Source of the DNA: Phyllobates terribilis
Lineage: Eukaryota
Direction: 5' to 3'
Assembly: GCF_046119375.1 (NCBI RefSeq)
Contig: NW_027362765.1
Coordinates: 184,202,001 to 184,266,000 of the forward strand
DNA length: 64,000 nt
Part shown: positions 35,828-61,795 of the stretch, one piece after another
How positions within the stretch are numbered: position 1 is the first letter of the stretch
Layout of the letters: each line of letters begins with the position of its first letter
Made by a program: the position numbers and the translations under genes
The notes under the pieces: generated by a model
Told to the model about the DNA's origin: nothing
Databases searched by the model: none
What the model saw: only the letters and a program-made list of their open reading frames with translations

Positions 35828-37457
<1,630 letters not shown>

Positions 37458-38660: not shown

Positions 38661-39729
38661 CGGTTTTAACATACTGTAGTTCCCAACCATACCGAATCCA
38701 GAGGGACTGCCCCGATTTGAGGGAACAGTCCCACTATCCCGGCAGGTCAGTGCTGTATCCTGGCTTCCTCCTACATTCTGAGATGTATTCTCTCCAACAT
38801 CTTCATTGCTCTGTAGTTCCTCCACCACGAGGGGCGGGACAGGCAAGTCTCTGCTCTGCATAAATTTACATTAATTAAATAAATAGTTCTTTTTTACTTG
38901 AGATCTGGTCTCATCGGGATTAAAATCCACAACCTGCATCATTGCTGGCAGTAGCAAAAGTTGTGAGCCACTACCTGCACTGACAAAAATGGGAGGATTT
39001 TATGTATGTTAATATACATTGTACACTATGAAATCACAGGCAGATTGTACAGAGATACATCTGTATATAGCAATGCATTTCTATGTACCTGTTTTCTAGA
39101 GGGAAAATTAAAGTTTTTTTTAGTCCTATAAAATTACTAAAAAATAATGAAAAACACTGCACGTCAAAGCCCAGTATCCAGCCGGCGCTTGTGGCCAATG
39201 AAAGCAGAGAAGAGAGGGAAAGCATGCGCTGGATACTGGGCTGTGACATGTGGTGAAACGCCGCCCACAGCCCAGTCAATCGTGGGTGTGCATATGATTG
39301 GGTCATGCCTGGGTGAATCAAATCTGGAAGTTGACGTGACATCAGTGGATGTCAGCAGTAGAGATGAGCGTTGTTCTACTCGAACTGTTCGCCAATCTCA
39401 AATTCGAGCTGTTTTGGGCGGTGTTCGAGCCGGTCGGCGAACACGAACAATTTGAGAAAAATTCGGCTGTTCGAGGTTATGTTCGATAACTGTTCGTGCA
39501 CCAAAATCATAACTGGATTTTTTCTCAGTAATGATGAAAATTAATGTTAATACGCAGTTTGAGTGTACAGCGGGGCGGGGGGAGGGGCAGGGGATGGATC
39601 TCTGCAGGAACAATGAAGATCTCCATTTTTTTTTCTCTTTCCCGCATTTGCAGTGGGGAGGTGCAATCTGTCAGCCTATCAGCAGCGCACACACGGAGCG
39701 AAGTGCTTTTTTTCACACAAGCAAGGGCA

Positions 39730-39775
39730 TGTGTGATTGGCAGTGTATGTCACATGTCCTTGCCCTATAAGACCA
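39730..39775 (+). promoter_or_regulatory. Possible transposase promoter (reverse CCAAT plus TATA-like)
   Basis: GATTGG at ~39735 and CTATAAGA at ~39765, upstream of the array and ORF. An acceptor-like TTTTTTGTGCAAACAACTCCAG lies just before the ATG. Motif-only inference. Confidence 0.3.
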
Positions 39776-40277
39776 AGCCATTTTCCCCGTTGCCACCATT
39801 TTCTCACTGCTGCAGCTGCGTGTTAGACGGCACCGCTGTTGCTGTGTGCGCTATACCTTGTTAATTTCAAGCCAATTTTCGCACAAATATACAGATAGCT
39901 TGGGAGTAGGGAATAGTTGTGATTGCAGTCCTTTTAAGGACTAGGTTACAGCATTTCCTACGACTTTTATCAGGCAGGTCTGTGCTCTTAAATAGATAGA
40001 TTGTGGGAGTAAAGACTAATTGTAATTGGAGTCCTTTTCAGGACTAGGTTACATCAGTTCCTATCAGTTTTTGCCAGGCAGGTCTGTGCCAGTGCTGTGC
40101 AAGTTTTTTTCACAGCATTTGGCTGAATCTAGCAAAGCTAATCCTTTTTGGCCTATTGCAGAGTGTGTTAGTCAGTGGAGTAGCCTATCTGTGTTGCAAG
40201 ATATACCACCTGTGTATAGAATACCAATTTTTTTACTGCACCTAGTGAAGTAAAATCTTTTGGGCATAGCATCATTC

Positions 40278-41442
40278 TATTAGTCCATCTATACTGACCT
40301 CCATCAGGTTGCAAACTGAATATAATTTTTTTCTGCATCTAGCTCTGAAAAAATATTTGGGCTTCTAGCAGTGTGTGGGACTTGGTCTATTAGTCCATCT
40401 ATACTGACCTCCATCAGGTTGCAAATTAAAAATAATTTTTTTCTTCATTTAGCTCTGAAAAAATATTTGGGCTTCTAGCAGTGTGTGGGACTTGTTCTAT
40501 TAGTCCTTCTATACTGACCTCCAGCAGGTTGCAAATTGAATATAATTTTTTTCTGCATCTAGCTCTGAAAAAATATTTGGGCTTCTAGCGGTGTGTGGGA
40601 CTTGGTCTATTAGTCCATCTATACTGACCTCCATCAGGTTGCAAATTAAAAATAATTTTTTTCTGCATCTAGCTCTGAAAAAATATTTGGGCTTCTAGCA
40701 GCGTGTGGGACTTGGTCTATTAGTCCATCTATACTGACCTCCATCAGGTTGCAAATTAAAAATAATTTTTTTCTGCATCTAGCTCTGAAAAAATATTTGG
40801 GCTTCTAGCAGTGTGTGGGACTTGGTCTATTAGTCCATCTATACTGACCTCCATCAGGTTGCAAATTAAAAATAATTTTTTTCTGCATCTAGCTCTGAAA
40901 AAATATTTGGGCTTCTAGCAGTGTGTGGGACTTGGTCTATTAGTCCATCTATACTGACCTCCATCAGGTTGCAAATTGAATAAAAAAATTTTCTGCATCT
41001 AGCTCTGAAAAAATATTTGGGCTTCTAGCGGTGTGTGGGACTTGGTCTATTAGTCCATCTATACTGACCTCCATCAGGTTGCAAATTAAAAATAATTTTT
41101 TTCTGCATCTAGCTCTGAAAAAATATTTGGGCTTCTAGCAGTGTGTGGGACTTGGTCTATTAGTCCATCTATACTGACCTCCATCAGGTTGCAAATTAAA
41201 AATAATTTTTTTCTTCATTTAGCTCTGAAAAAATATTTGGGCTTCTAGCAGTGTGTGGGACTTGTTCTATTAGTCCTTCTATACTGACGTCCAGCAGGTT
41301 GCAAATTGAATATAATTTTTTTCTGCATCTAGCTCTGAAAAAATATTTGGGCTTCTAGCGGTGTGTGGGACTTGGTCTATTAGTCCATCTATACTGACCT
41401 CCATCAGGTTGCAAATTAAAAATAATTTTTTTCTGCATCTAA
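40278..41442. repeat. 110-bp tandem array, ~10.6 copies, in the hAT copy A leader
   Basis: TATTAGTCC(A/T)TCTATACTGAC starts at 40278, 40388, 40498 and so on up to 41378. Confidence 0.95.
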
Positions 41443-41557
41443 CCCAGCCAATAGTTTTGGCCTAATACCACAGTTTGGCCACTCAGCTCTGCTCGGTTAC
41501 CATCCATTGTTTTTTTGTGCAAACAACTCCAGAGTTGTGAATTAGTTAACCACCAAA

Positions 41558-44500
41558 ATGAGTGGAAAAAGGCCTGCTGCTGGTGGAAAGGGGAATAGGC
41601 GTGTTGGGAAGGGGAAAAAAGGTTGTGTCCGTGGGGTAGGTGCAGAAGAAAGACCATCTTCCAGCCAAACTAAAATGTCTACTTCTTTTAGCGGACAATG
41701 TGATAAGATCCCTTTCTTACGGCCACGCCAATCGCTACAAATTCCAGATGAGGCACAAAAACAGCAGGTGCTTCAACGGATATCAAGTGCTCCTTTAAGT
41801 GGGCTCTCCTCCACATCAACTTCAACATCACAAATACTCCAGTCCTCAAAGGTGTCACCCAAATCGCACTTGCTTCCTCACAGCTCCCAAATCTCCAGCT
41901 GCCCGTCTGAGTATGAGGTAGAACAGATGGTTGAGTCTGCAGAGCTGTTTACTCATACTATAGCCTGGGAATCAGAGGTCGACTCCAGCGCTTCTGTGAA
42001 TCCAGACGAGGAAATGATCTGCACTGATGCCCAGAATCTTTATGAGTCGGATCCAGGACCAGACGCAGAAGGTTCTGACCATAATGTAGACCCTCATTCC
42101 CAAACTGTAACTCCTGTTGGTGGAGACAATGAGGAAGACGATGATAAGACTCAAATACCTGATTGGAGCGACAACTTTAGTTTTTTGCCAGGGCAGGAAC
42201 AGGTTGGCTCTGAGGACGACGGGTGTGATAACGCACAGGGTGATGATGATGAGGTCGGAGATCCCACTTACTGTCAACCCACAGTCAGCCAAGAGATGAG
42301 GTCAGCAGAGGAGGTGGAGGAAGATGCTAGTGACGACGAGGTCAGGTTGCGCCTTCCTGGACAGAGACGTAGTACTGGAAGCACGTCAACAACTGCATCC
42401 TCAAACACAACTCTGCCTCTCACCACAAGTCGTGGTGGCTCTTCAGGTCGCATGGGTGCTAAGCCTTGCATAGCCTGGGCATTTTTTCAGATCGATAAAG
42501 ATGACCCAACTCGTGTTATCTGTAACATTTGTCAGCAAAAGCTAAGTAGAGGCCAAAAAATACATAGTTTGAGTACTTCATGCATGAACCGGCACATGGA
42601 CATGAAGCATAAGTTGCAGTGGGAAGCTCAGTGTGCTACAATGCGGCCTAGCCGGCCGAGCCAATCACCGTCTGCCATATCTTGTGCATCCGCGGCCTCT
42701 TCATCCTCTGTGACTGGGGGGACAGCAGTCACACCTGTTTTGGGGCGCAGACCTGCCACCTCTTTACCCGCAACAGCCAGCGTGATTGGCAGGTCATCAT
42801 TTTCTTTGGAGGTGGTAACACCAGCTGGTGTTGAGCGCTGTCCGACATCGATAGCACCACCTTTGGATCAAGGCAACCTAACATGTCCGCCTGCATCTTC
42901 CTCACAGACCGGCAGTTTGCCGGGGACACCCTTATCAACCCCGTCTAAGCACAATAGCCAGCCCTCGGTCCCTCAGATGTGGACAAGTAAAAGACCATTT
43001 CCTCCTAGCCATGAGAAAGCTAAGAGGTTGAATTTCACCATCTGCAAGCTCTTGGCTACAGAAATGCTGCCTTTCCGCCTGGTGGACACAGAGGATTTTC
43101 GAGACCTTATGTCCGTCGCAGTGCCCCAGTACCAGATGCCCAGTCGGCACTACTTCTCAAAGAAAGGTGTGCCTGCGCTCCACCAGCATGTCGCACACAA
43201 CATCACCGCTTCTTTGAGAAACTCTGTGTGTGACAGGGTGCATTTCACCACAGACACTTGGACGAGTAGGCATGGACAGGGGCGTTACATGTCGCTGACT
43301 GGGCACTGGGTAACTATGGTGACAGCAGGACAAGGGGCTGCTGTCCAAGTCTTGCCGTCCCCACGAGTTGTGCGTCAATCCTCTTTATGTCATTTTTCCT
43401 CCACTGCTTCTGCCTCCTCAACCTCCTCTCGGTCTTCCACCTGCACCCAAAGCCTGTCTGGTCATGCCACAAGCTTTCTAACTGCGCAGAAGGGATCCTG
43501 CACACCTCCTTACTATGCTGGCAGTAGGGCTCAACGTCATCAGGCGGTTTTTACATTGAAATGTCTGGGAAATGTGAGTCACACAGCTGAGGAGTTGTGG
43601 TCAGCTCTGGAGAACCAATTTCATGAATGGTTGTCTCCACTGGACCTGAAACCAGGGAAGGCCGTGTGCGACAATGCTGCAAACCTGGGTGCGGCCCTTC
43701 GCCGGGGCAATGTCACACACGTGCCTTGTATGGCTCACGTGTTGAACCTGGTTGTCCAGCAATTTTTAGCCCACTATCCCAGACTAGATGGCCTTCTGCA
43801 GAGGGCACGGTCGCTGTGTGCTCACTTCCGCCGTTCGCATCCCGCAGCTCAGCGACTTACATCTCTACAGAAGTCGTTGGGCCTGCCACTTCACCGGCTA
43901 AAATGCGATGTGCCTACCCGGTGGAATTCAACTCTGCACATGTTGCAGCGACTGTGGCAGCACCGACAAGCCTTGGTGCAATACGTTCTGACGTATAGCC
44001 TGGGCCAACGAGATTCAGAGGTGGGGCAAATAACGCTGGAGGAGTGGTCTCAGATCAGGGACCTATGCACCCTTCTGCACAGTTTTGAAATGGCGACGAA
44101 GATGTTTAGTGCTGACGATGCCATTATCAGCATGACTATTCCGGTGATTTACATGCTGGAGCACATGTTAAACAGAATTCGGAGTCAGGTGGTGGCACAA
44201 GAGGAGGTGGAGGAAGTAGAGGAGGAGGAGTTGTATGCGGAAGGGCTAACATCTGCAAGGTCCAGACGGTCGGCAGCACCAGGGCGGCAGGCATGTGAGG
44301 GTGGGGGAGATGATTTTACCAGGGCGCATGGTAGCAGCCAAACTAGTGAGGAAGGTGCAGGAGCCCAGGAAGAAGTGGAGGACGAACTGATGGAAGACTC
44401 ATCAGATGAGGGAGACCTTGATCACATTTCTGTTGTGCGAGGTTGGGGGGAGAGGACAGAGGAAGGAAGCATGATTGTTACCTCGCCACCAACACAACAG

Positions 44501-45238
44501 GGACTTGGTGCTCCTGGATGCGCAACACACATGAGTGCCTTCTTGCTGCACTACCTGCAACATGACCCTCGAATTGTGAGAATTAGAAATAATCCTGACT
44601 ACTGGGTTGCCACACTGTTAGATCCCCGGTACAAAAGTAAATTTGCAGAAATTATTCCTGCCATAGAAAGGGATGCACGCATGCAGGAGTATCAGCAGAG
44701 ACTGTTGCAGAATCTTACATGTGCTTTTCCACAAAATACCAGTGGTGCACGTAGTGAATCTCACAGTTCCTACTTGCCAACCGTGGGACCGTCAAGTGTT
44801 CAGCACTCAAACCGTAACAGAACCACAGTATCTGCTGGTAACATCAATTTTGCGGAATCATTTCACCACTTTTTTAGCCCATCCTTTGCAAGGCCACAGG
44901 AGACAAGAAGTCTGACACATAGTCAACGCCTAGAGACGATGGTACAGGAGTATCTCCAAGTAAACATTGAAGCCACGACTGTGTCACTGGACCCTTGCTC
45001 TTTTTGGGCTTCCAATCTGGATAAATGGCCGGAGCTAGCCACTTACGCCTTGGAGATCTTGTCATGCCCCGCAGCCAGCGTTCTGTCTGAACGTGTGTTC
45101 AGCGCTGCTGGTGGTGTGCTGACAGATAAGCGCACGCGGCTCTCCACTGATAATGTAGACAGACTCACGTTCATAAAGATGAACAAATCATGGATCCGAA
45201 TCGACTTTTCTACCCCTGTGTCATCCTGGGGAGAGTAA
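41558..45238 (+). CDS. hAT (Ac-family) transposase, 1226 aa, apparently intact
   Basis: Basic N-terminus; zf-BED (AWAFF...CNICQQKL...RHMDMKH); catalytic TTDTWTS and CDNAAN; CxxH (PCMAH); DVPTRWNST; dimerisation domain WPELATYALEILSCPAASVLSERVFS containing the catalytic E. Single uninterrupted ORF. Confidence 0.95.
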   Translation: MSGKRPAAGGKGNRRVGKGKKGCVRGVGAEERPSSSQTKMSTSFSGQCDKIPFLRPRQSLQIPDEAQKQQVLQRISSAPLSGLSSTSTSTSQILQSSKVSPKSHLLPHSSQISSCPSEYEVEQMVESAELFTHTIAWESEVDSSASVNPDEEMICTDAQNLYESDPGPDAEGSDHNVDPHSQTVTPVGGDNEEDDDKTQIPDWSDNFSFLPGQEQVGSEDDGCDNAQGDDDEVGDPTYCQPTVSQEMRSAEEVEEDASDDEVRLRLPGQRRSTGSTSTTASSNTTLPLTTSRGGSSGRMGAKPCIAWAFFQIDKDDPTRVICNICQQKLSRGQKIHSLSTSCMNRHMDMKHKLQWEAQCATMRPSRPSQSPSAISCASAASSSSVTGGTAVTPVLGRRPATSLPATASVIGRSSFSLEVVTPAGVERCPTSIAPPLDQGNLTCPPASSSQTGSLPGTPLSTPSKHNSQPSVPQMWTSKRPFPPSHEKAKRLNFTICKLLATEMLPFRLVDTEDFRDLMSVAVPQYQMPSRHYFSKKGVPALHQHVAHNITASLRNSVCDRVHFTTDTWTSRHGQGRYMSLTGHWVTMVTAGQGAAVQVLPSPRVVRQSSLCHFSSTASASSTSSRSSTCTQSLSGHATSFLTAQKGSCTPPYYAGSRAQRHQAVFTLKCLGNVSHTAEELWSALENQFHEWLSPLDLKPGKAVCDNAANLGAALRRGNVTHVPCMAHVLNLVVQQFLAHYPRLDGLLQRARSLCAHFRRSHPAAQRLTSLQKSLGLPLHRLKCDVPTRWNSTLHMLQRLWQHRQALVQYVLTYSLGQRDSEVGQITLEEWSQIRDLCTLLHSFEMATKMFSADDAIISMTIPVIYMLEHMLNRIRSQVVAQEEVEEVEEEELYAEGLTSARSRRSAAPGRQACEGGGDDFTRAHGSSQTSEEGAGAQEEVEDELMEDSSDEGDLDHISVVRGWGERTEEGSMIVTSPPTQQGLGAPGCATHMSAFLLHYLQHDPRIVRIRNNPDYWVATLLDPRYKSKFAEIIPAIERDARMQEYQQRLLQNLTCAFPQNTSGARSESHSSYLPTVGPSSVQHSNRNRTTVSAGNINFAESFHHFFSPSFARPQETRSLTHSQRLETMVQEYLQVNIEATTVSLDPCSFWASNLDKWPELATYALEILSCPAASVLSERVFSAAGGVLTDKRTRLSTDNVDRLTFIKMNKSWIRIDFSTPVSSWGE

Positions 45239-45442
45239 AAGCTTGATGATTGGTTAAAATCACCCTACCAACCGTTTTAAGCTTTCAAATTACTAATCAT
45301 GTTTATCTGTATCTTGACTGGAAAATAATTTGGGCTTTGTAGCAGTGTGCAGCACTGATCCTATTAGGCCATCTATAATAAGCTTCACCAGATTTAAAAT
45401 TAAAAATAATTTTTAGCTGCATCTAGCCCGGAAAATAATTTT

Positions 45443-47008
45443 GGGGCTCCGAGATGCGCAAGACACATAAGTGCCTTCTTGCTGCACTACCTGCAGCATG
45501 ACCCTCATATTGTCAGAATTCGAAGTAATCATGACTACTGGGTTGCCACACTCTTAGATCCCCCAAACTTTTCGATCAACCTTTTCATTTTAATAAAGAC
45601 CAAAAAAATGGTCATTTTTGAAATTATAAGCATTAGCAGGTTGTTAGAAACTGAAATCAAACAGTTTTCAACTCAAAACTTTATTCTAGGTGATGTTACA
45701 TTTTCACATAGGACCCCTTGTTCGAAAGGAGCTTCTGAACTCTCTCGTCCATTGAATTTGTCAGGTTTTGGATGGTTTCTGCTTCAATTGTTTTGCATGA
45801 GGACAGAATACCCTCCCAGAGCTGTTGCTTAGATGTGAACTGCCTCCCGCCATCATAGACACTCCTTTTAATGATGCTCCAAAGGTTCTGAATGGGGTAG
45901 AGGTCAGGAGAGCATGGGGGTCACACCATAAGTTTGTCCCCTTTTATGCCCATATCAGCCAGAGATGCAGATGTTTTATGTGCAGCATGAGATGGTGCAT
46001 TATCATGCAGAAAAATGATCTTGCTGTGAAATACACGGTTCTTCTTCTTGAACCATGGCAGGAAGTGCTGTTTGAGAAAATCCACATACATTATGGAGTT
46101 CATCTTTAGCGCCTTCAGGGATCCTAAAGGGGCCGACAATCTCTCTCCCCATGATTCCAGCCCAAAACATTACTCCACCTCCTCCTTGTTGGCGCTGTAG
46201 CCGTGTTTGCGTGGGGTGTCCATCAACCAGCCATCCTCCACTCCATTCATCTGGACCATCGAGCGCTGCACGGCACTCATCCGTGAACAAAACAGTTTTG
46301 AAATCAGTCTTCATGTAATGTTTGGCCCACTGGAGCCGTTTCTGCTTGTGTGAAGTGGATAGAGGAGGTCGACAGGATGGCGTATGCACAGCTGCAAACC
46401 TCTGAAGGACCCTGCATCTTGTTGTTCGGGGGACGTTGGAGGCACAAGCAGCTTCAAAAACTTGTCTGCTGCTATGACTAGGCTTTTTTGCCGCTGCTGT
46501 TTCAACCTGACGTAATTGCCTGTAGGAAAGAGTCCTCAATTTGCCCTTATCAGCACGCACACGTGTGTACTGTGAATCAGCTACATACTTCTTGATTGCC
46601 AAGACACTTCATCCTGATCATCGCACAATGTTGATTGTAGTCATGCCTTGACCTAAACACTCCACAATTTGTTGCTTCTCAGCAGCCGACACATCCTTTT
46701 TCTTTCCCATTTTGGCAGAAAATGTAGGCTGCTTAATAATGTGAGAGAGCCTTCTTAAGTAGTCTTGCCTTTCATTGGACACACCTGCCAAACTAATTAG
46801 CACAGGTGTCTGCAATTGCTTACAGTGATATAAAGAGCCCTGACACACATCACCATCAATGAGTTTAACTGACAAACAAACAAATTCTTCCCTTATCACT
46901 CCTAAACACTTTTTGCATAATAATTTGGAACGCGGTGTACATGTGCTTTTCCACAAAACACCAGTGGTTCACGTAGTGAATCTTACAGTTCTAACTTGCC
47001 AACCGTGG
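45443..47008 (+). pseudogene. Second, diverged fragment of the hAT transposase (45443-45563 and 46938-47008) split by the Tc1-like insertion
   Basis: Matches ~44508-44627 (LHYLQHDP...ATLLDP) and ~44716-44787 of the intact ORF. The ~90 bp between them is missing. Confidence 0.85.
45564..46937 (-). mobile_element. Tc1-like DD37E (TRT-type) element remnant, one TIR retained
   Basis: Broken ORF 45696-46710 (MGKKKDVS...VLFTDEC...GGGVMFWAGI...HDNAPSH...PIQNLW). 37 residues lie between the second D and the degenerate E position. End TA|CACCGCGTTCCAAATTATTATGCA. Confidence 0.85.
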
Positions 47009-47009
47009 T

Positions 47010-48835
47010 CTGTATGGAATTGTTCAATAAAGGGCCCAAAATTAAGATAACATAGATGGGAGAGGTCTCTATGAATAGGAATTCCTAAGTATTTGATACC
47101 CTGTGAGGGCCAGGCAAAGGGAAAGTTGGACTGGATGGAATCCTATATGAATTTAGGGAGGGAGACATCGAGGGCCTCAGACTTCGCTGCATTGATTTTA
47201 AAATTTTACCATGTAACAAAGTGATCTATTTCAGCCATAACAGCAGGGATGGATATATGTGATTGAGTGATATATACTAGGACATCATCAGCAAATAGAG
47301 AGCACTTGTACTCGGTGCCTCCCACCTCAATCCACCTAATATTGGGGTTATGGCGAATTGATGAGAGCAGGTGCTCCGTCACTAGGATGTATAAGAGAGG
47401 GGACAGAGGACATCCCTGCCTTGTCCCATTGGTGATTGTGAAAGGTGATGAAAATGTTCTGACGCACCCCCTGGGCCTTGGGACACCCGGAGCCGGACCC
47501 TTTTTGGTGGATGCTGGTGGTTGTAGTCTTCGTGGCGGCGATCCGGTTCCGTGGCTCAGGGCGGTCAAACCAGTGGCGGAACTATTTATGTGGTTTTGAT
47601 GTTTAAATGTCCGACTATGCCACCCGTGGATTGCGGTCAGAGTGAACCGCCGCTACAGGGCAGACCGCTAAGGCTGGTGTTGTGGGTGCAGCAGAGCGTA
47701 GCATAACTCCCCACGGGAGGAGTATAGCCTCAGGGCAGTGTATGCGGAGGATGGGGGTGATGGTGCAGGGCAGCAGCAGTAACGACACGGAGTCAGTGAT
47801 GCAGTTCAGGGCCTTTACTCACAGTTCTTATTATCCAGACCACGTCTGCAGGTAACGGCTGCCCACGTCGTACTGTGCTCACCAGGTGAGGGGCTCAGAC
47901 AACTCCCAGATAACTTTGGAGCGCTTCACAGGACCCCCTTTGTGTGTCCTTTGTCTGGCCTTTCTTACCAACACTTCTGTCCGGCTGCCTCGGGCCTCCT
48001 CTTGGTAAACTTGGCGCCAGTTTCCCTGACCCTATGTGGTGCCTTCCTAGCGGGTGGAGCAAGGGGCTGCGCCACATAAAATGTCAGAGCCTCCGGTTTC
48101 TAGCTGAGGGTCGTTTCCTGCCTCCACTAGTTCGGGGACCGGTCTCCCCCTTTGGCCTGACCCCTCCACGCAGGTGGATTCGGGCGTGCGGTGGCGACTC
48201 GCCCGTCCGCACCCCTGGGATCCCTTCATTCCTCGTTCCTGGAGCCTTCTCCGCTCCTCTTCCTTCCTTCTCCCTCTTGCAGGCCTGGGCCTCTGTTACT
48301 AGGCCCGCCTCCAGAGCAGAGCTCATGCAGAGCCCCTGCTCCCTGCCACTTCTGCTCAGACTTCTCTGCACTGAACTAAGATGGTGCCCACCTTTTATAC
48401 TCCCTTCTCAATGCACCCAGGAACTGCTTCCTCCCTGCTCCTGCACTGCAGGGTTCCCCTTCCTCAGTGTTCCCTCCCCCCACTCCAGCCAGGGACAGGG
48501 ACTGTCGTGCCCATCTCAGGGGCATATTGGTCGCCCTGCCCCACGGCAATGTGGTGTAATGCATGCAGGTGTCGGGTCCTGATCCACACTCCATCCTTAT
48601 CTGAGAGTGAGATATCACACCTCTGGGTGAGGTGCAATACGTCTGTAGCAACCGAGCCCTCGGTGCTACAGTTCCATTTATCTTCAGCCTAGGTGACGTA
48701 TTGTGATACAGGGCCGTGATTTTGGCTATAAAAGGGTCCCCTAGACCCCTACCCCAAGCTTTTTAAGAGAATCATATATGGCGTGCCAGGAGACTCTATG
48801 GAATGCTTTCTCAGCATCCAACGAGAGTATCTACT
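47010..48835 (-). pseudogene. L1-type reverse transcriptase fragment split by a solo LTR
   Basis: LSLDAEKAF...KING|TFSSPFTITNGTRQGCPLSP...LFADD...KINAAKS...KYLGI on the minus strand. Confidence 0.9.
47460..48670 (-). mobile_element. Solo LTR (1211 bp) inside the L1 fragment of copy A
   Basis: TG...CA ends and 4-bp TSD GTTC at 47456-47459 and 48671-48674. Confidence 0.9.
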
Positions 48836-48941
48836 TACAAATTTTTAACTGCATCTAGCCAAGGAAATACTTTGTGCCTAGTAGCAGTGTCTGCTAGTCA
48901 GCGGATTATCCTGGCTGTTAAGCAAGCTACACCACCTGTAG

Positions 48942-50492: not shown

Positions 50493-50597
50493 CTACAGGT
50501 GGTGCAGCTTGCTTAACAGCCGGGATAATCCGCTGACTAGCAGACACTGCTACTAGGCACAAAGTATTTCCTGGGCTAGATGCAGTTAAAAATTTGT

Positions 50598-52420
50598 AAT
50601 TAGATACTCTCGTTGGATGCTGAGAAAGCATTCCATAGAGTCTCCTGGCACGCCATATATGATTCTCTTAAAAAGCTTGGGGTAGGGGTCTAGGGGACCC
50701 TTTTATAGCCAAAATCACGGCCCTGTATCGCAATACGTCACCTAGGCTGAAGATAAATGGAACTGTAGCACCCTGAGGGCTCGGTTGCTACAGACGTATT
50801 GCACCTCACCCAGAGGTGTGATATCTCACTCTCAGGTAAGGATGGAGTGTGGATCAGGACCCGACACCTGCATGCATTACACCACATTGCCGTGGAGCAG
50901 GGCGACCAATATGCCCCTGAGATGGGCACGACAGTCCCTGGCTGGAGTGGGGGGAGGGAACACTGAGGAAGGGGAACCCTGTAGTGCAGGAGCAGGGAGG
51001 AAGCAGTTCCTGGGTGCATTGAGAAGGGAGTATAAAAGGTGGGCACCATCTTAGTTCAGTGCAGAGAAGTCTGAGCAGAAGTGGCAGGGAGCAGGGGCTC
51101 TGCATGAGCTCTGCTCCGGAGGCGGGCCTAGTAACAGAGGCCCAGGTCTGGAAGAGGGAGAAGGAAGGAAGAGGAGCGGAGAAGGCTCCAGGAACGAGGA
51201 ATGAAGGGATCCCAGGGGTGTGGACGGGCGAGTCGCCACCGCACGCCCGAATCCACCTGCGTGGAGGGGTCAGGCCAAAGGGGGAGACCGGTCCCCGAAC
51301 TAGTGGAGGCAGGAAACGACCCTCAGCTAGAAACCGGAGGCTCTGACATTTTATGTGGCGCAGCCCCTCGCTACACCCGCTAGGAAGGCACCACATAGGG
51401 TCAGGGAAACTGGCGCCAAGTTTACCAAGAGGAGGCCCGAGGCAGCCGGACAGAAGTGTTGGTAAGAAAGGCCAGACAAAGGACACACAAAGGGGGTCCT
51501 GTGAAGTGCTCCAAAGTTATCTGGGAGTTGTCTGAGCCCCTCACCTGGTGAGCACAGTACGACGTGGGCAGCCGTTACCTGCAGACGTGGTCTGGATAAT
51601 AAGAACTGTGAGTAAAGGCCCTGAACTGCATCACTGACTCCGTGTCGTTACTGCTGCTGCCCTGCACCATCACCCCCATCCTCCGCATACACTGCCCTGA
51701 GGCTATACTCCTCCCGTGGGGAGTTATGCTACGCTCTGCTGCACCCACAACACCAGCCTCAGCGGTCTGCCCTGTAGCGGCGGTTCACTCTGACCGCAAT
51801 CCACGGGTGGCGTAGTCGGACATTTAAACATCAAAACCACATAAATAGTTCCGCCACTGGTTTGACCGCCCTGAGCCACGGAACCGGGTCGCCGCCACGA
51901 AGACTACAACCACCAGCATCCACCAAAAAGGGTCCGGCTCCGGGTGTCCCAAGGCCCAGGGGGTGCGTCAGAACATTTTCATCACCTTTCACAATCACCA
52001 ATGGGACAAGGCAGTGATGTCCTCTGTCCCCTCTCTTATACATCCTAGTGACGGAGCACCTGCTCTCATCAATTCGCCATAACCCCAATATTAGGTGGAT
52101 TGAGGTGGGAGGCACCGAGTACAAGTGCTCTCTATTTGCTGATGATGTCCTAGTATATATCACTCAATCACATATATCCATCCATGCTGTTATGGCTGAA
52201 ATAGATCACTTTGTTACATGGTAAAATTTTAAAATCAATGCAGCGAAGTCTGAGGCCCTCGATGTCTCCCTCCCCAAATCCATATAGGATTCCATCCAGT
52301 CCAACTTTCCCTTTGCCTGGCCCTCACAGGGTATCAAATACTTAGGAATTCCTATTCATAGAGACCTCTCCCATCTATGTTATCTTAATTTTGGGCCCTT
52401 TATTGAACAACTCCATACAG
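50598..52420 (+). pseudogene. L1-type RT fragment in copy B, split by a solo LTR
   Basis: Mirror of 47010-48835. Confidence 0.88.
50764..51970 (+). mobile_element. Solo LTR (1207 bp) in copy B
   Basis: TGTAGCACC...GTGCGTCA ends, TSD GAAC at 50760-50763 and 51971-51974, and TATAAAA at ~51031. Confidence 0.9.
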
Positions 52421-52492
52421 ACCACGGTTGGCAAGTTAGAACTGTAAGATTCACTACGTGAACCACTGGTGTTTTGTGGAAAAGCACATGTA

Positions 52493-53866
52493 CACTGCGT
52501 TCCAAATTATTATGCAAAAAGTGTTTAGGAGTGATAAGGGAAGAATTTGTTTGTTTGTCAGTTAAACTCATTGATGGTGATGTGTGTCAGGGCTCTTTAT
52601 ATCACTGTAAGCAATTGCAGACACCTGTGCTAATTAGTTTGGCAGGTGTGTCCAATGAAAGGCAAGACTACTTAAGAAGGCTCTCTCACATTATTAAGCA
52701 GCCTACATTTTCTGCCAAAATGGGAAAGAAAAAGGATGTGTCGGCTGCTGAGAAGCAACAAATTGTGGAGTGTTTAGGTCAAGGCATGACTACAATCAAC
52801 ATTGTGCGATGATCAGGATGAAGTGTCTTGGCAATCAAGAAGTATGTAGCTGATTCACAGTACACACGTGTGCGTGCTGATAAGGGCAAATTGAGGACTC
52901 TTTCCTACAGGCAATTACGTCAGGTTGAAAGAGCAGCGGCAAAAAAGCCTTGTCATAGCAGCAGACAAGTTTTTGAAGCTGCTTGTGCCTCCAACGTCCC
53001 CCGAACAACAAGATGCAGGGTCCTTCAGAGGTTTGCAGCTGTGCATGCGCCATCCTGTCGACCTCCTCTATCCACTTCACACAAGCAGAAACTGCTCCAG
53101 TGGGCCAAACATTACATGAAGACTGATTTCAAAACTGTTTTGTTCACGGATGAGTGCCGTGCAGCGCTCGATGGTCCAGATGGATGGAGTGGAGGATGGC
53201 TGGTTGATGGACACCCCACGCAAACATGGCTACAGCGCCAACAAGGAGGAGGTGGAGTAATGTTTTGGGCTGGAATCATGGGGAGAGAGATTGTCGGCCC
53301 CTTTAGGATCCCTGAAGGCGCTAAAGATGAACTCCATAATGTATGTGGATTTTCTCAAACAGCACTTCCTGCCATGGTTCAAGAAGAAGAACCGTGTATT
53401 TCACAGCAAGATCATTTTTCTGCATGATAATGCACCATCTCATGCTGCACATAAAACATCTGCATCTCTGGCTGATATGGGCATAAAAGGGGACAAACTT
53501 ATGGTGTGACCCCCCATGCTCCCCTGACCTCTACCCCATTCAGAACCTTTGGAGCATCATTAAAAGGAGTGTCTATGATGGCGGGAGGCAGTTCACATCT
53601 AAGCAACAGCTCTGGGAGGGTATTCTGTCCTCATGCAAAACAATTGAAGCAGAAACCATCCAAAACCTGACAAATTCAATGGACGAGAGAGTTCAGAAGC
53701 TCCTTTCGAACAAGGGGTCCTATGTGAAAATGTAACATCACCTAGAATAAAGTTTTGAGTTGAAAACTGTTTGATTTCAGTTTCTAACAACCTGCTAATG
53801 CTTATAATTTCAAAAATGACCATTTTTTTGGTCTTTATTAAAATGAAAAGGTTGATCGAAAAGTTT
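52493..53866 (+). mobile_element. DD37E Tc1-like remnant in copy B
   Basis: Broken ORF 52720-53735 with the same frameshifts as in copy A. Confidence 0.85.
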
Positions 53867-54193
53867 GGGGGATCTAAGAGTGTGGCAACCCAGTAGTCAT
53901 GATTACTTCGAATTCTGACAATATGAGGGTCATGCTGCAGGTAGTGCAGCAAGAAGGCACTTATGTGCCTTGCGCATCTCGGAGCCCCAAAATTATTTTC
54001 CAGGCTAGATGCAGCTAAAAAATATTTTTAATTTTAAATCTGGTGAAGCTTTAGTATAGATGGCCTAATAGGATCAGTGCTGCACACTGCTACAAAGCCC
54101 AAATTATTTTCCAGTCAAGATACAGATAAACATGATTAGTAATTTGAAAGCTTAAAACGGTTGGTAGGGTGATTTTAACCAATCATCAAGCTT

Positions 54194-57100
54194 TTACTCT
54201 CCCCAGGATGACACAGGGGTAGAAAAGTCGTTTCGGATCCATGATTTGTTCATCTTTATGAACGTGAGTCTGTCTACATTATCAGTGGAGAGCCGCGTGC
54301 GCTTATCTGTCAGCACACCACCAGCAGCGCTGAACACACGTTCAGACAGAACGCTGGCTGCGGGACATGACAAGATCTCCAAGGCGTAAGTGGCTAGCTC
54401 CGGCCATTTATCCAGATTGGAAGCCCAAAAAGAGCAAGGGTCCAGTGACACAGTCGTGGCTTCAATGTTTACTTGGAGATACTCCTGTACCATCGTCTCT
54501 AGGCGTTGACTATGTGTCAGACTTCTTGTCTCCTGTGGCCTTGCAAAGGATGGGCTAAAAAAGTGGTGAAATGATTCCGCAAAATTGATGTTACCAGCAG
54601 ATACTGTGGTTCTGTTACGGTTTGAGTGCTGAACACTTGACGGTCCCACGGTTGGCAAGTTGGAACTGTGAGATTCACTACGTGCACCACTGGTATTTTG
54701 TGGAAAAGCACATGTAAGATTCTGCAACAGTCTCTGCTGATACTCCTGCATGCGTGCATCCCTTTCTATGGCAGGAATAATTTCTGCAAATTTACTTTTG
54801 TACCGGGGATCTAACAGTGTGGCAACCCAGTAGTCAGGATTATTTCTAATTTTCACAATTCGAGGGTCATGTTGCAGGTAGTGCAGCAAGAAGGCACTCA
54901 TGTGTGTTGCGCATCCAGGAGCACCAAGTCCCTGTTGTGTTGGTGGCGAGGTAACAATCATGCTTCCTTCCTCTGTCCTCTCCCCCCAACCTCGCACAAC
55001 AGAAATGTGATCAAGGTCTCCCTCATCTGATGAGTCTTCCATCAGTTCGTCCTCCACTTCTTCCTGGGCTCCTGCACCTTCCTCACTAGTTTGGCTGCTA
55101 CCATGCGCCCTGGTAAAACCATCTCCCCCACCCTCACATGCCTGCCGCCTTGGTGCTGCTGACCGTCTGGACCTTGCAGATGTTAGCCCTTCCGCATACA
55201 ACTCCTCCTCCTCTACTTCCTCCACCTCCTCTTGTGCCACCACCTGACTCCGAATTCTGTTTAACATGTGCTCCAGCATGTAAATCACCGGAATAGTCAT
55301 GCTGATAATGGCATCGTCAGCACTAAACATCTTCGTCGCCATTTCAAAACTGTGCAGAAGGGTGCATAGGTCCCTGATCTGAGACCACTCCTCCAGCGTG
55401 ATTTGCCCCACCTCTGAATCTCGTTGGCCCAGGCTATACGTCAGAACGTATTGCACCAGGGCTTGTCGGTGCTGCCACAGTCGCTGCAACATGTGCAGAG
55501 TTGAATTCCACCGGGTAGGCACATCGCATTTTAGCCATACAAGGCACGTGTGTGACATTGCCCCGGCGAAGGGCCGCACCCAGGTTTGCAGCATTGTCGC
55601 ACACGGCCTTCCCTGGTTTCAGGTCCAGTGGAGACAACCATTCATGAAATTGGTTCTCCAGAGCTGACCACAACTCCTCAGCTGTGTGACTCACATTTCC
55701 CAGACATTTCAATGTAAAAACCGCCTGATGACGTTGAGCCCTACTGCCAGCATAGTAAGGAGGTGTGCAGGATCCCTTCTGCGCAGTTAGAAAGCTTGTG
55801 GCATGACCAGACAGGCTTTGGGTGCAGGTGGAAGACCGAGAGGAGGTTGAGGAGGCAGAAGCAGTGGAGGAACTTTGACATAAAGAGGATTGACGCACAA
55901 CTCGTGGGGACGGCAAGACTTGGACAGCAGCCCCTTGTCCTGCTGTCACCATAGTTACCCAGTGCCCAGTCAGCGACATGTAACGCCCCTGTCCATGCCT
56001 ACTCGTCCAAGTGTCTGTGGTGAAATGCACCCTGTCACACACAGAGTTTCTCAAAGAAGCGGTGATGTTATGTGCGACATGCTGGTGGAGCGCAGGCACA
56101 CCTTTCTTTGAGAAGTAGTGCCGACTGGGCATCTGGTACTGGGGCACTGCGACGGACATAAGGTCTCGAAAATCCTCTGTGTCCACCAGGCGGAAAGGCA
56201 GCATTTCTGTAGCCAAGAGCTTGCAGATGGTGAAATTCAACCTCTTAGCTTTCTCATGGCTAGGAGGAAATGGTCTTTTACTTGTCCACATCTGAGGGAC
56301 CGAGGGCTGGCTATTGTGCTTAGACGGGGTTGATAAGGGTGTCCCCGGCAAACTGCCGGTCTGTGAGGAAGATGCAGGCGGACATGTTAGGTTGCCTTGA
56401 TCCAAAGGTGGTGCTATCGATGTCGGACAGCGCTCAACACCAGATGGTGTTACCACCTCCAAAGAAAATGATGACCTGCCAATCACGCTGGCTGTTGCGG
56501 GTAAAGAGGTGGCAGGTCTGCGCCCCAAAACAGGTGTGACTGCTGTCCCCCCAGTCACAGAGGATGAAGAGGCCGCGGATGCACAAGATATGGCAGATGG
56601 TGGTTGGCCCGGCCGGCTAGGCCGCATTGTAGCACACTGAGCTTCCCACTGCAACTTATGCTTCATGTCCATGTGCCGGTTCATGCATGAAGTACTCAAA
56701 CTATGTATTTTTTGGCCTCTACTTAGCTTTTGCTGACAAATGTTACAGATAACACGAGTTGGGTCATCTTTATCGATCTGAAAAAATGCCCAGGCTATGC
56801 AAGGCTTAGCACCCATGCGACCTGAAGAGCCACCACGACTTGTGGTGAGAGGCAGAGTTGTGTTTGAGGATGCAGTTGTTGACGTGCTTCCAGTACTACG
56901 TCTCTGTCCAGGAAGGCGCAACCTGACCTCGTCGTCACTAGCATCTTCCTCCACCTCCTCTGCTGACCTCATCTCTTGGCTGACTGTGGGTTGACAGTAA
57001 GTGGGATCTCCGACCTCATCATCATCACCCTGTGCGTTATCACACCCGTCGTCCTCAGAGCCAACCTGTTCCTGCCCTGACAAAAAACTAAAGTTGTCGC

Positions 57101-57731
57101 TCCAATCAGGTATTTGAGTCTTATCATCGTCTTCCTCATTGTCTCCACCAACAGGAGTTACAGTTTGGGAATGAGGGTCTACATTATGGTCAGAACCTTC
57201 TGCGTCTGGTCCTGGATCCGACTCATAAAGATTCTGGGCATCAGTGCAGATCATTTCCTCGTCTGGATTCACAGAAGCGCTGGAGTCGACCTCTGATTCC
57301 CAGGCTATAGTATGAGTAAACAGCTCTGCAGACTCAACCATCTGTTCTACCTCATACTCAGACGGGCAGCTGGAGATTTGGGAGCTGTGAGGAAGCAAGT
57401 GCGATTTGGGTGACACCTTTGAGGACTGGAGTATTTGTGATGTTGAAGTTGATGTGGAGGAGAGCCCACTTAAAGGAGCACTTGATATCCGTTGAAGCAC
57501 CTGCTGTTTTTGTGCCTCATCTGGAATTTGTAGCGATTGGCGTGGCCGTAAGAAAGGGATCTTATCACATTGTCAGGTAAAAGAAGTAGACAGTTTAGTT
57601 TGGCTGGAAGATGGTCTTTCTTCTGCAGATGTTACTGTTGCTTTAACACCTACCCCACGGACACAACCTTTTTTCCCCTTCCCAACACGCCTATTCCCCT
57701 TTCCACCAGCAGCAGGCCTTTTTCCACTCAT
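54194..57731 (-). pseudogene. Inactivated hAT transposase of copy B
   Basis: ATG at 57731, in-frame TGA at 57573-57575 (GGA in copy A), and a 164-bp frameshifting deletion at the AGCC junction 55533-55536. Confidence 0.92.
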
Positions 57732-57847
57732 TTTGGTGGTTAACTAATTCACAACTCTGGAGTTGTTTGCACAAAAAAACAATGGATGGTAACCGAGCAG
57801 AGCTGAGTGGCCAAACTGTGGTATTAGGCCAAAACTATTGGCTGGGT

Positions 57848-59790
57848 TAGATGCAGAAAAAAATTATTTTGAATTTGCAACCTGATGGAGGTCAGTATAG
57901 ATGGATTAATAGAACAAGACCCACACACAGCTAGAAGCCCAATATTTTTTCAGAGGTAGATGCAGGAAAAAAATATATTCAGTTTGCAACCTGATGGAGG
58001 TCAGTATAGATGGACTAATACAACAAGTCCCACACACAGCTAGAAGCCCAAATATTTTTTCAGAGGTACTGTAGATGCAGATAAAAATTAGTTTTAATTT
58101 GCAACCTGATGGAGGTCAGTATAGATGGACTAATAGAGAAAGTCCGACACACTACTAGAAGGCCAAATATTTTTTCAGAGCTAGATGCAGAAAAAAATTA
58201 TATTCAGTTTGCAACCTGATGGAGGTCAGTATAGATGGATTAATAGAACAAGACCCACACACAGCTAGAAGCCCAATATTTTTTCAGAGGTAGATGCAGA
58301 AAAAAATATATTCAGTTTGCAACCTGATGGAGGTCAGTATAGATGGACTAATACAACAAGTCCCACACACAGCTAGAAGCCCAATATTTTTTCAGAGGTA
58401 GATGCAGAAAAAAATATATTCAGTTTGCAACCTGATGGAGGTCAGTATAGATGGACTAATACAACAAGTCCCACACACAGCTAGAAGCCCAATATTTTTT
58501 CAGAGGTAGATGCAGAAAAAAATATATTCAGTTTGCAACCTGATGGAGGTCTGTATAGATGGATTAATAGAACAAGTCCCACACACAGCTAGAAGCCCAA
58601 TATTTTTTCAGAGGTAGATGCAGAAAAAAATATATTCAGTTTGCAACCTGATGGAGGTCAGTATAGATGGACTAATACAACAAGTCCCACACACAGCTAG
58701 AAGCCCAAATATTTTTTCAGAGGTACTGTAGATGCAGTTAAAAATTAGTTTTAATTTGCAACCTGATGGAGGTCAGTATAGATGGACTAATAGAGAAAGT
58801 CCGACACACTACTAGAAGGCCAAATATTTTTTCAGAGCTAGATGCAGAAAAAAATTATATTCAGTTTGCAACCTGATGGAGGTCAGTATAGATGGACTAA
58901 TAGAGAAAGTCCGACACACTACTAGAAGGCCAAATATTTTTTCAGAGCTAGATGCAGAAAAAAATTATATTCAGTTTGCAACCTGATGGAGGTCAGTATA
59001 GATGGATTAATAGAACAAGACCCACACACAGCTAGAAGCCCAATATTTTTTCAGAGGTAGATGCAGAAAAAAATATATTCAGTTTGCAACCTGATGGAGG
59101 TCAGTATAGATGGACTAATACAACAAGTCCCACACACAGCTAGAAGCCCAATATTTTTTCAGAGGTAGATGCAGAAAAAAATATATTCAGTTTGCAACCT
59201 GATGGAGGTCAGTATAGATGGACTAATACAACAAGTCCCACACACAGCTAGAAGCCCAAATATTTTTTCAGAGGTACTGTAGATGCAGATAAAAATTAGT
59301 TTTAATTTGCAACCTGATGGAGGTCAGTATAGATGGACTAATAGAGAAAGTCCGACACACTACTAGAAGGCCAAATATTTTTTCAGAGCTAGATGCAGAA
59401 AAAAATTATATTCAGTTTGCAACCTGATGGAGGTCAGTATAGATGGACTAATAGAGAAAGTCCGACACACTACTAGAAGGCCAAATATTTTTTCAGAGCT
59501 AGATGCAGAAAAAAATTATATTCAGTTTGCAACCTGATGGAGGTCAGTATAGATGGATTAATAGAACAAGACCCACACACAGCTAGAAGCCCAATATTTT
59601 TTCAGAGGTAGATGCAGAAAAAAATATATTCAGTTTGCAACCTGATGGAGGTCAGTATAGATGGACTAATACAACAAGTCCCACACACAGGTAGAAGCCC
59701 AAATATTTTTTCAGAGGTACTGTAGATGCAGATAAAAATTAGTTTTAATTTGCAACCTGGTGGAGGTTAGTATAGATGGACTAATAGAAT
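57848..59790. repeat. ~110-bp tandem array, about 18 copies, in the copy B leader
   Basis: About 18 GCAACCTG(A/G)TGGAGG cores. Variant units with a GTACTGTAG insertion recur at ~58067, 58722, 59275 and 59717. Confidence 0.93.
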
Positions 59791-61795
59791 GATGCTATGC
59801 CCAAAAGATTTTACTTCACTAGGTGCAGTAAAAAAATTGGTATTCTATACACAGGTGGTATATCTTGCAACACAGATAGGCTACTCCACTGACTAACACA
59901 CTCTGCAATAGGCCAAAAGGATTAGCTTTGCTAGATTCAGCCAAATGCTGTGAAAAAAACTTGCACAGCACTGGCACAGACCTGCCTGGCAAAAACTGAT
60001 AGGAACTGATGTAACCTAGTCCTGAAAAGGACTCCAATTACAATTAGTCTTTACTCCCACAACCTATCTATTTAAGAGCACAGACCTCCCTGATAAAAGT
60101 CGTAGGAAATGCTGTAACCTAATCCTTAAAAGGACTGCAATCACAACTATTCCCTACTCCCAAGCTATCTGTAGATTTGTGCGAAAATTGGCTTGAAATT
60201 AACAAGGTATAGCGCACACAGCAACAGCGGTGCCGTCTAACACGCAGCTGCAGCAGTGAGAAAATGGTGGCGACGGGGAAAATGGCTTGGTCTTATAGGG
60301 CAAGGACATGTGACATACACTGCCAATGACACATGCCCTTGCTTGTGTTAAAAAAAGCACTTCGCTCCGTGTGTGCGCTGCTGATAGGCTGACAGATTGC
60401 ACCTCCCCACTGCAAATGCGGGAAAGAGAAAAAAAAATGGAGATCTTCATTGTTCCTGCAGAGATCCATCCCCTGCCCCTCCCCCCACCCCGCTGTACAC
60501 TCAAACTGCGTATTAATATTAATTTTCATCATTACTGAGAAAAAATCCAGTTATGATTTTGGTGCACGAACAGTTATCGAACATAACCTCGAACAGCCGA
60601 ATTTTTCTCAAATTGTTCGTGTTCGCCGAACGGCTCGAACACCGCCCAAAACAGCTCAAATTTGAGATTGGCGAACAGTTCGAGTAGAACAACGCTCATC
60701 TCTAGTCAGCAGTGGCTGCAACCGGGGTCATGTGATGCAGACTGAGCGAGCAGCAATAGCGCCTCTCACAGGCACATATGGCAGCAGTATGTATTTACAA
60801 AAATATTTATTTGAAAGGTGTAAATCGATGGACGCTTTATACAATGTAGTGGACCCCCTCTTTAACTTTATTGGATGGAGTCGGCCACAGCTTTATTTAA
60901 AATTTTATTTTCCAACCAACTCTTTAACCACAAAACAAGTGAAACGTCCAGAACCCGAAATGGTATGCACCAGCGGACTCCTGGTGGGCAAGTCCGTCTT
61001 CAGTTCCTTTAAGTCTCCAACCAGATAATTTTATTTATTTTACTCACTTATATAGCGCCATTAATTCCACAACGCTTTGGTGACATTATAACCGCCAGCT
61101 GTGACTTGAGTCTCAGAAATTCTAGAAACATAGAAAACAGTATAAGTATCTTGTACAATTACAAGGTAACACATGATAAGGTAGGGAGGGAGGGAAGCTC
61201 CTTCAGCAGGTACCGGTAAAGAAACCAAAAAAATGGGAAGGCGGCATTTTATCCAGGTGGCCACAAGTTCAAATTAGACAAAGGCGGGGGGAGGAGCAGG
61301 GGAGGAATAAGGCACTTAACATAACCACACATTAGGGGAAGACCAGGACAATGTTAAACACGGATGGCACACTGATGTATGCTTTACGTGTTTTAACGGA
61401 CCCATAGACTAATATTGGCCCTTATCATCCACGCTGCTGGTAAAAAACGGACATGACTCCATGTGGTTTACACGAAAACATGGTCCATGTAAAAATACAG
61501 ACATGTGAGCAGCCCCATAGGTTATAATTGTTACGTGTGGGATTCGTGAAAAAAACGAATACCGCACATACAAGAAACACAGACGTGTGAAGGGGGCCTA
61601 AGTGGGTCTATTTCTTTACATGGCACTCATATGTTATACTGAATAAATCAAGATATTTTAAAACTTTTGCTTTCATTTTTTTCATTATTTGCATATCATT
61701 AACATGTCAATCTATCCTGTGATTTCCATAATTACATGACTTTTCCTTCTTGGTGTTATAATTTCAATGTTGAGGAGTGTATATAGATATTTATA

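What the first reader, a model, noticed from the sequence alone, without database searches (positions are those of the whole stretch)
39351..60712. Two ~10-kb hAT transposons inserted tail-to-tail into one target site: triplicated TSD and a 21-kb palindrome with an 8-bp loop
Seen: the layout is GTCAGCAG-[copy A, +]-GTCAGCAG-[copy B, -]-GTCAGCAG, with the non-palindromic 8-mer in the same orientation at all three junctions. The outer flanks are not mirror images. Established: hAT elements make 8-bp TSDs, and GTCAGCAG fits the Ac-family nTnnnnAn target pattern. Inference: a second element inserted exactly into the first element's TSD, through same-site re-targeting or local hopping, rather than arising by fold-back duplication. 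A fold-back or assembly chimera would give CTGCTGAC on the right and mirrored flanks. A palindrome with ~10-kb arms and an 8-bp spacer is expected to be unstable, so its persistence is notable.
Basis: partly seen in the sequence, partly recalled or inferred. Interest (0 to 1): 0.92.

Follow-up and report, generated by a model that had tools for sequence, protein, structure and literature searches.

The report
Two hAT transposons sharing one target
Two large, distinguishable copies of one frog hAT transposon sit tail-to-tail in the same 8-base target, giving three copies of the target duplication and a 21-kb imperfect palindrome; this double insertion is a known kind of event in Drosophila P and hobo elements.

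Summary
GTCAGCAG occurs in the + orientation at 39351, 49713 and 60705. Between these sit copy A (39359-49712, +, 10,354 bp) and copy B (49721-60704, -, 10,984 bp). The outer flanks are unrelated to each other.

Both copies are hAT elements. They have TAGAG/TAGTG ends, subterminal GTTCG repeats and a BED plus hAT-dimerisation transposase. A has an intact 1226-aa reading frame. B's is broken by a stop and a 164-bp deletion.

The arms are not identical. Unique sequence differs by 0.85%, there is an in-frame 21-bp indel, and the internal 110-bp satellite arrays share no orthologous monomers. One A/B difference is a variant that splits the whole family in three individuals. So these look like two independent insertions from different family lineages into one 8-bp target. 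They are not a fold-back, an assembly artefact or a sister-chromatid copy.

The geometry is already described: singed-weak P elements, and "double insertion" of P and hobo. This is therefore a new member of a known kind. No age can be derived, so the "persistence" puzzle is unsupported.

Read-level confirmation of the central junction was inconclusive. Unchecked scan notes report a second such dimer in this genome.

The parts
39351..39358 (+). Left copy of the 8-bp target-site duplication, GTCAGCAG
39359..49712 (+). hAT copy A, 10,354 bp; head TAGAGATGAGC..., tail ...GCTCAACACTA; autonomous-looking
39359..39558 (+). Head of A: 11-nt imperfect TIR (9/11 match with the tail) and 8 GTTCG/CGAAC subterminal motifs in the first 200 nt
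40276..41441 (+). 110-bp satellite inside A, 10.6 near-uniform units
41558..45238 (+). Intact 1226-aa transposase ORF of A: zf-BED, hAT dimerisation domain, and Hermes-like TTDTWTS / CDNAANL / CxxH / PTRWNST / SERVFS motifs
45239..49712 (+). Cargo and tail of A: Tc1-like HTH fragment 46003-46602 (-), RT fragment 47206-47568 (-), 18S rRNA fragment 48902-49265 (-), and 12 GTTCG/CGAAC motifs in the last 200 nt
49713..49720 (+). Central copy of the target-site duplication, GTCAGCAG; the 8-bp spacer of the palindrome
49721..60704 (-). hAT copy B, 10,984 bp, same ends as A, defective
54194..57500 (-). Broken transposase gene of B (pieces 55434-57500 and 54194-55594). A 164-bp deletion with junction 55536|55537 and GGCT microhomology removes the CxxH to PTRW region. 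There is a stop at codon 46 and an in-frame 21-bp extra segment near 57648
57848..59789 (-). Satellite of B: 17.6 units in a 115/108/110/110 higher-order pattern (443-bp period); none of these monomer types occurs in A
50168..50532 (+). 18S rRNA fragment in the cargo of B, mirror of 48902-49265
60705..60712 (+). Right copy of the target-site duplication, GTCAGCAG

Best explanation
This is a double insertion. One member of a giant cargo-carrying hAT family of a frog genome integrated at GTCAGCAG and duplicated it. Later a second, distinguishable member of the same family integrated, in the opposite orientation, into exactly the 8-bp copy lying next to the first element's tail. It duplicated that copy again, giving TSD-[A>]-TSD-[<B]-TSD. 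The structure and the difference between the two copies are shown. The order of insertion is unknown, because the geometry is symmetrical. The reason for the exact re-use is inferred. One factor is that the site was already a proven good target (nTnnnnAn). A second is either an attraction of the incoming transpososome to a resident end loaded with transposase, or target-site complementation by the element's terminal bases as proposed for P elements. The result is a convergent pair of transposase genes in a 21-kb imperfect palindrome.
For: Three identical, same-orientation 8-mers lie exactly at the element ends. Both copies end on the same nucleotides. The flanks are unrelated. hAT identity rests on zf-BED and Dimer_Tnp_hAT, the Hermes-aligned catalytic motifs, the TIRs TAGAG/TAGTG with terminal clustering of GTTCG/CGAAC motifs (20 of 25 within the terminal 200 nt), and anuran ZBED4/6-like relatives at 46% identity or less. 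The copies are distinguishable. They differ by 77 substitutions in 9,016 bp, a 164-bp deletion, an in-frame 21-bp indel and a stop in B. Their satellite arrays have no orthologous monomers: the best A-to-B match is 90-95.5%, against 95.7% within A. At 49920 B has T and A has C, and family contigs in three individuals split about 57% C to 43% T. That difference therefore pre-existed in the family. Precedent: P-element pairs in inverted orientation exactly 8 bp apart (singed-weak) and the model predicting them (PMC2577343); double insertion with the TSD kept in the junction for P and for the hAT element hobo (PMC5932611); tail-to-tail P pairs in a natural strain (PMC5534036).
Against: No read or contig was shown to bridge the central junction. 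The element tail is so repetitive that the single read-laying run was uninformative. The run index had only 2 sampled words for the junction; one was held by three runs of sample S3 and by one RNA run, and none by the S1 runs. No empty-site or single-insertion allele was seen. The different-donor inference rests on one polymorphic site plus the satellite arrays, and satellites can turn over fast in place. Other full family copies could not be fetched for a tree.
Confidence: 0.78

Rival explanations
1. Self-adjacent reinsertion. After replication, the element excised from one sister chromatid (or the homologue) and integrated into the duplication beside its own copy on the other chromatid. A and B were identical at birth, and all differences arose later in place.
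For: Both partners are the same 10-kb cargo-carrying form with 99% identical unique sequence. hAT elements hop locally: 15% of Tol2 reintegrations fall on the donor chromosome (PMC2753552), and inverse Ds pairs arose at 1% from a single Ds (PMC3429523). Sister cohesion would place the same preferred target next to the excised element; this last point is inference.
Against: The A/B difference at 49920 is a variant that splits the whole family roughly 57:43 in three individuals. A new mutation would hit that site and that base with a chance of about 0.3%. The satellite arrays are built from different monomer types with no orthologous pairs, and B's types differ from A's by 5-10 changes per 110 bp, against 0.85% in unique sequence. 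The 21-bp indel is in frame.
Confidence: 0.13
2. Assembly artefact: a fold-back read, a haplotype join or a chimera created the palindrome, and only one element is really there.
For: Long palindromes are a known product of long-read library artefacts (my own knowledge). No bridging contig for the centre was shown, and the listed S1 runs held none of the sampled junction words.
Against: An artefactual fold-back gives identical arms, mirrored flanks and a break at a random point. Here the arms differ by 0.85% plus a 164-bp indel, a 21-bp indel and about 630 bp of satellite. The flanks are unrelated. The joint lies exactly at two element ends separated by the exact TSD in direct orientation. An assembler cannot join on an 8-bp overlap. 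One junction-specific word is held by three separate runs of one sample.
Confidence: 0.05
3. A pre-formed inverted dimer transposed here as one unit through its two outer heads, or an in-place fold-back duplication was followed by rearrangement, and the central 8-mer matches by coincidence.
For: The outer ends form 790-nt inverted repeats that are 99% complementary. Unchecked scan notes describe hAT-ended palindromic elements that seem to move as units.
Against: The inner 8-mer would be the relic of another site and would equal the new TSD with a chance of about 1 in 65,536. A fold-back would give CTGCTGAC and mirrored flanks on the right.
Confidence: 0.02

Closest known systems
singed-weak double P element of Drosophila melanogaster (Roiha, Rubin and O'Hare 1988, as cited and modelled in Linheiro and Bergman 2008, PMC2577343)
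   Same: Two TIR transposons that make 8-bp duplications, in inverted orientation in one target and separated by exactly 8 bp. The model predicts re-use of a site that already holds an insertion.
   Different: It belongs to the P superfamily, not hAT, involves roughly 1-kb defective elements (my recollection), and is an insect laboratory allele known to be hypermutable. Here the elements are 10-11 kb in a frog, and no instability data exist.
Double insertion of TEs (McGurk and Barbash 2018, PMC5932611), including the hobo tandem of strain I03 with GTGGGGAC between the TIRs
   Same: The mechanism and the diagnostic are the same: the junction between the two elements holds the target-site duplication. 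hobo is a hAT. Inverted tandems were also seen.
   Different: Those cases are mostly head-to-tail and can expand into arrays. Inverted ones were rare and not analysed. Here the pair is tail-to-tail, and all three TSD copies are read directly in an assembly.
Closely linked inversely oriented Ac/Ds pairs (rice OsRLG5, PMC3429523; maize alternative transposition) and maize double-Ds
   Same: Cis-paired inverted hAT elements produced by short-range transposition. They are substrates for sister-chromatid and single-chromatid transposition, with rearrangements in 35.6% of regenerants.
   Different: Those pairs are separated by host DNA or, in double-Ds, nested one inside the other. They do not share one 8-bp target. 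Rearrangement activity at the present locus is untested.
Mu killer of maize (inverted duplication of MuDR that silences the family; my own knowledge, not checked here)
   Same: An inverted repeat of a transposase-bearing element whose read-through transcript would be a hairpin RNA. A and B have convergent transposase genes.
   Different: No transcript or small-RNA evidence here. Mu killer arose by rearrangement, not by double insertion.

Membership tests
hAT superfamily | 8-bp target-site duplication | tested here: met
   GTCAGCAG, exactly 8 bp, at all three junctions
hAT superfamily | Short imperfect TIRs beginning YARNG, and subterminal short repeats | tested here: met
   TAGAGATGAGC against TAGTGTTGAGC, 9/11 match; GTTCG/CGAAC 8 + 12 of 25 occurrences in the terminal 200 nt
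hAT superfamily | Transposase with BED zinc finger and C-terminal hAT dimerisation domain | tested here: met
   PF02892 at 4.1e-10 and PF05699 at 2.1e-14, both above the curated cut-offs
hAT superfamily | DDE catalytic residues with CxxH and RW motifs, as in Hermes | tested here: met
   phmmer to Hermes 4d1q at 1.9e-19 aligns CDNAANL, CmaH, PTRWNST and SERVFS; TTDTWTS is present in the translation. Identified by motif only; activity not assayed.
Ac-type hAT target preference (nTnnnnAn) | T at position 2 and A at position 7 of the duplication | tested here: met
   G-T-C-A-G-C-A-G by inspection. This is one site only, so it is compatible with the pattern but does not demonstrate it.
Double insertion (McGurk and Barbash) | The junction between the two elements holds a sequence of TSD length equal to the outer duplications | tested here: met
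Double insertion (McGurk and Barbash) | The two partners are separate insertion events (distinguishable copies) | tested here: met
   164-bp and 21-bp indels, different satellite monomer types, and a shared family polymorphism at 49920
Double insertion (McGurk and Barbash) | Empty-site or single-insertion alleles exist at the same locus | not tested
Fold-back duplication or palindromic assembly artefact | Mirror-image flanks, reverse-complemented 8-mer on the far side, identical arms | tested here: not met
Double-Ds type nested pair | One element inserted inside the other | tested here: not met
   Both copies are complete end to end and abut through the TSD.

The most novel reading that the evidence does not exclude
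This hAT family systematically re-targets the duplication beside resident copies, either through transposase oligomers bound to subterminal repeats or through target-site complementation. The resulting inverted dimers would then be the seeds of the many hAT-ended nested-palindrome (foldback-like) elements that unchecked scan notes report in this genome. Each palindrome centre would be a relic 8-bp duplication.
Probability: 0.2. Interest if true: 0.7.

Novelty: new member of a known kind. Interest (0 to 1): 0.42.

Why it matters
This is a clean example, in an assembled vertebrate genome, of same-site double insertion by a hAT element. All three duplications are intact, and one partner still has an intact transposase reading frame with the expected catalytic motifs. 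Such pairs are known in plants to drive deletions, inversions and chromosome breakage. Convergent inverted copies can give hairpin RNA that silences a family. If the event recurs in this genome, as scan notes suggest, it would point to homing by a vertebrate hAT transposase and to a route from ordinary transposons to foldback elements. As a single locus it illustrates a known process and does not change current understanding.

Tried and rejected
1. Read laying on 49650-50160, chosen in advance to avoid the 18S fragments, drew 15-21 thousand contigs per run onto the tail. No listed piece bridged the centre, so the result is inconclusive.

2. A run search with the 60-nt junction sampled only 2 words, which is a weak test.

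3. An exact-protein look-up of the 1226-aa transposase found nothing. The homologue search found nothing above 46% identity. No other family copies could therefore be obtained for a tree or a target-site logo.

4. A metagenome scan for any end-N8-end junction gave 37 hits. All are unrelated microbial hairpins with no similarity to the element.

5. The substitution pattern in the ORF (6 synonymous, 15 non-synonymous) is near neutral. The lower divergence of the ORF (0.6% against about 1.0%, p = 0.03) is too weak to use.

6. Mechanisms that avoid re-targeting were worked through by reasoning and rejected: replication of a flank hairpin, template switching during gap repair, and sister-chromatid transposition of one end. 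Each predicts a reverse-complemented 8-mer, mirrored flanks or no spacer.

7. Roiha et al. 1988 is not held in the library, so it is cited through PMC2577343.

8. Word depth was rejected as a copy-number estimate, because the sums are physically impossible as coverage.
Full report
**Observation.** The 8-mer GTCAGCAG lies on the + strand at 39351-39358, 49713-49720 and 60705-60712. Between the first two sits copy A (39359-49712, 10,354 bp). Between the last two sits copy B (49721-60704, 10,984 bp) in reverse orientation. Both begin TAGAGATGAGCG and end CTCAACACTA. The central junction CTCAACACTA-GTCAGCAG-TAGTGTTGAG is unique in the window, with none expected by chance. Inverted-repeat blocks of 99% complementarity tile the two arms, and the innermost pair is 8 nt apart. 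The 1-kb outer flanks match only themselves.

**What the elements are.** Copy A holds an intact 1226-aa ORF (41558-45238) with a BED zinc finger and the hAT dimerisation domain. It aligns to the Hermes transposase at 1.9e-19 across the CDNAANL, CxxH, PTRWNST and SERVFS motifs, and TTDTWTS lies upstream.
- The ends are an imperfect 11-nt TIR (9/11 match) of the YARNG type.
- GTTCG/CGAAC motifs are concentrated in the terminal 200 nt: 20 of 25 occurrences, where about 1 would be expected for those 400 nt from the element-wide density.
- The 8-mer fits nTnnnnAn.
- The nearest database proteins are anuran "ZBED4/6-like" predictions at 46% identity or less. The genome is therefore a frog's, and the family itself is not in the protein collections.
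- Between the head and the ORF lies a 110-bp satellite.
- Behind the ORF lie 4.5 kb of cargo: a Tc1-like fragment, a reverse-transcriptase fragment and an 18S fragment.
- Both copies carry the same cargo. Unchecked notes of this scan report the same giant family elsewhere in the genome.

**The two copies are not the same.** Outside the satellite they differ by 77 substitutions in 9,016 aligned bases (0.85%; 47 transitions, 20 in CpG context).
- B has a 164-bp deletion with GGCT microhomology that removes the CxxH to PTRW region. It also has a stop at codon 46 and an in-frame 21-bp extra segment.
- The satellite arrays are the most telling. A has ten nearly uniform monomers, 95.7% alike. B has seventeen monomers in a 115/108/110/110 higher-order pattern, and none of those monomer types occurs in A. 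The best match of any A monomer in B is 90-95.5%.
- In the 440 nt of tail that could be compared with reads, the copies differ at four sites. At three of them the letter of A was not reported at 10% or more of contig depth, so B appears to carry the family's majority letter. At 49920 B has T and A has C, while contigs of three individuals split about 57% C to 43% T. A new mutation would coincide with such a family-wide variant about 0.3% of the time, whereas two random family members would differ there about half the time.
- I therefore read A and B as members of different lineages of the family, not as one copy and its in-place duplicate.

**Mechanism.** A staggered 8-bp cut at a target and repair of the gaps duplicate the target in direct orientation on both sides of the insert, whatever the orientation of the insert. 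A second integration into the 8-bp copy beside a resident element therefore gives exactly TSD-A-TSD-B-TSD. I worked through the alternatives: replication of a flank hairpin (the hAT excision intermediate), fold-back template switching, gap repair with a template switch, and one-ended sister-chromatid transposition. Each predicts a reverse-complemented 8-mer, mirrored flanks or no spacer, and none of these is seen. Movement of a pre-formed dimer would need a 1-in-65,536 coincidence. An assembler cannot join on 8 bp, and an artefactual fold-back would have identical arms.

The double insertion is thus shown by its signature. The reason for the exact re-use is inferred. As an order of magnitude, scan notes list roughly ten to twenty giant copies in about 49 Mb read so far. 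Uniform insertion would then give about 1e-5 such dimers in that sample, so even a thousand-fold site preference falls short. This estimate rests on unchecked notes.

Two published ideas could supply the rest. One is complementation of the target motif by the element's own terminal bases, which Linheiro and Bergman proposed for P elements; it predicts inverted pairs exactly 8 bp apart (PMC2577343). The other is tethering through the many BED domains of an oligomeric hAT transposase bound to subterminal repeats (Hermes, PMC10368747, seen in the abstract only).

**Comparison with what is known.** The geometry is that of the singed-weak double P element, as cited in PMC2577343. McGurk and Barbash named the process double insertion. 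They showed the TSD within P-element junctions and an 8-nt motif between tandem hobo elements, hobo being a hAT. They noted that inverted tandems exist but are rarer (PMC5932611). Two tail-to-tail P pairs were found in one natural strain (PMC5534036). Inverse Ds pairs arise at 1% by short-range transposition and then cause rearrangements in 35.6% of regenerated plants (PMC3429523). Tol2 shows local hopping in a vertebrate (PMC2753552). The present locus is therefore a new member of a known kind. What is new is the host (a frog), the size (two 10-11-kb cargo-carrying elements giving a 21-kb palindrome) and the fact that all three duplications can be read intact.

**Persistence.** Long inverted repeats with short spacers stall replication and are counter-selected (PMC3300023). 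Because at least part of the arm divergence predates the dimer, there is no estimate of its age, and it may be recent or even polymorphic. There is also no sign of arm-to-arm homogenisation: differences are spread evenly at 0.6-1.2% per region. The first mismatch lies only 19 nt from the ends. The claimed paradox is therefore not established.

**Reads.** The right flank is present in three samples of the species. The 60-nt junction query gave only two sampled words. One was held by three runs of sample S3 and by an RNA run, and none by the listed S1 runs. This neither confirms nor contradicts the junction.

**Recurrence.** Unchecked notes of this scan describe three related things in the same genome: another tail-to-tail hAT dimer joined through its duplication (s1-238356), a head-to-head pair of 11-kb elements 670 bp apart (s1-218037), and many hAT-ended nested palindromes (for example s1-238367 and s1-217963). 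I could not read those sequences. They motivate the novel reading that dimers of this kind seed foldback-like hAT elements, which I rate at about 0.2.

**Verdict.** The process is known, the example is new, and the interest is moderate.

Noticed in passing
window 40276-41441 and 57848-59789: The 110-bp satellite carried inside the element has evolved separately in the two copies. A has 10 near-uniform monomers. B has 17 monomers in a 443-bp higher-order repeat built of three monomer types absent from A.
   Followed up: yes
window 36000-37284: Tc1/mariner copy with 39-nt inverted ends and a 296-aa ORF (36249-37139) carrying HTH_Tnp_Tc3_2 and DDE_3 domains, 2 kb left of the insertion site.
   Followed up: partly
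window 26058-27661: Relic of a second, distant hAT. It has 66-70% nucleotide identity to parts of copy A's transposase gene, and the ORF 26897-27661 holds a hAT dimerisation domain.
   Followed up: partly
window 7113-8410: About 66% similar to the cargo segment 47459-48670 of copy A. It is probably another copy of the retroelement piece that the hAT carries.
   Followed up: no
window 49721-50160: The last 450 bp of the element draw 15-21 thousand short contigs per run in three individuals, with an almost even C/T split at 49920. The tail is shared by a very large, diverse population of elements.
   Followed up: partly
window 48902-49265 and 50168-50532: Degenerate 18S rRNA fragments (Rfam SSU_rRNA_eukarya, 70 bits) sit about 450 bp inside each tail, as part of the fixed cargo.
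   Followed up: partly
window 41558-45238 and 57500-54194: The two transposase genes are convergent towards the palindrome centre, so a read-through transcript would be self-complementary. No RNA evidence was obtained.
   Followed up: no
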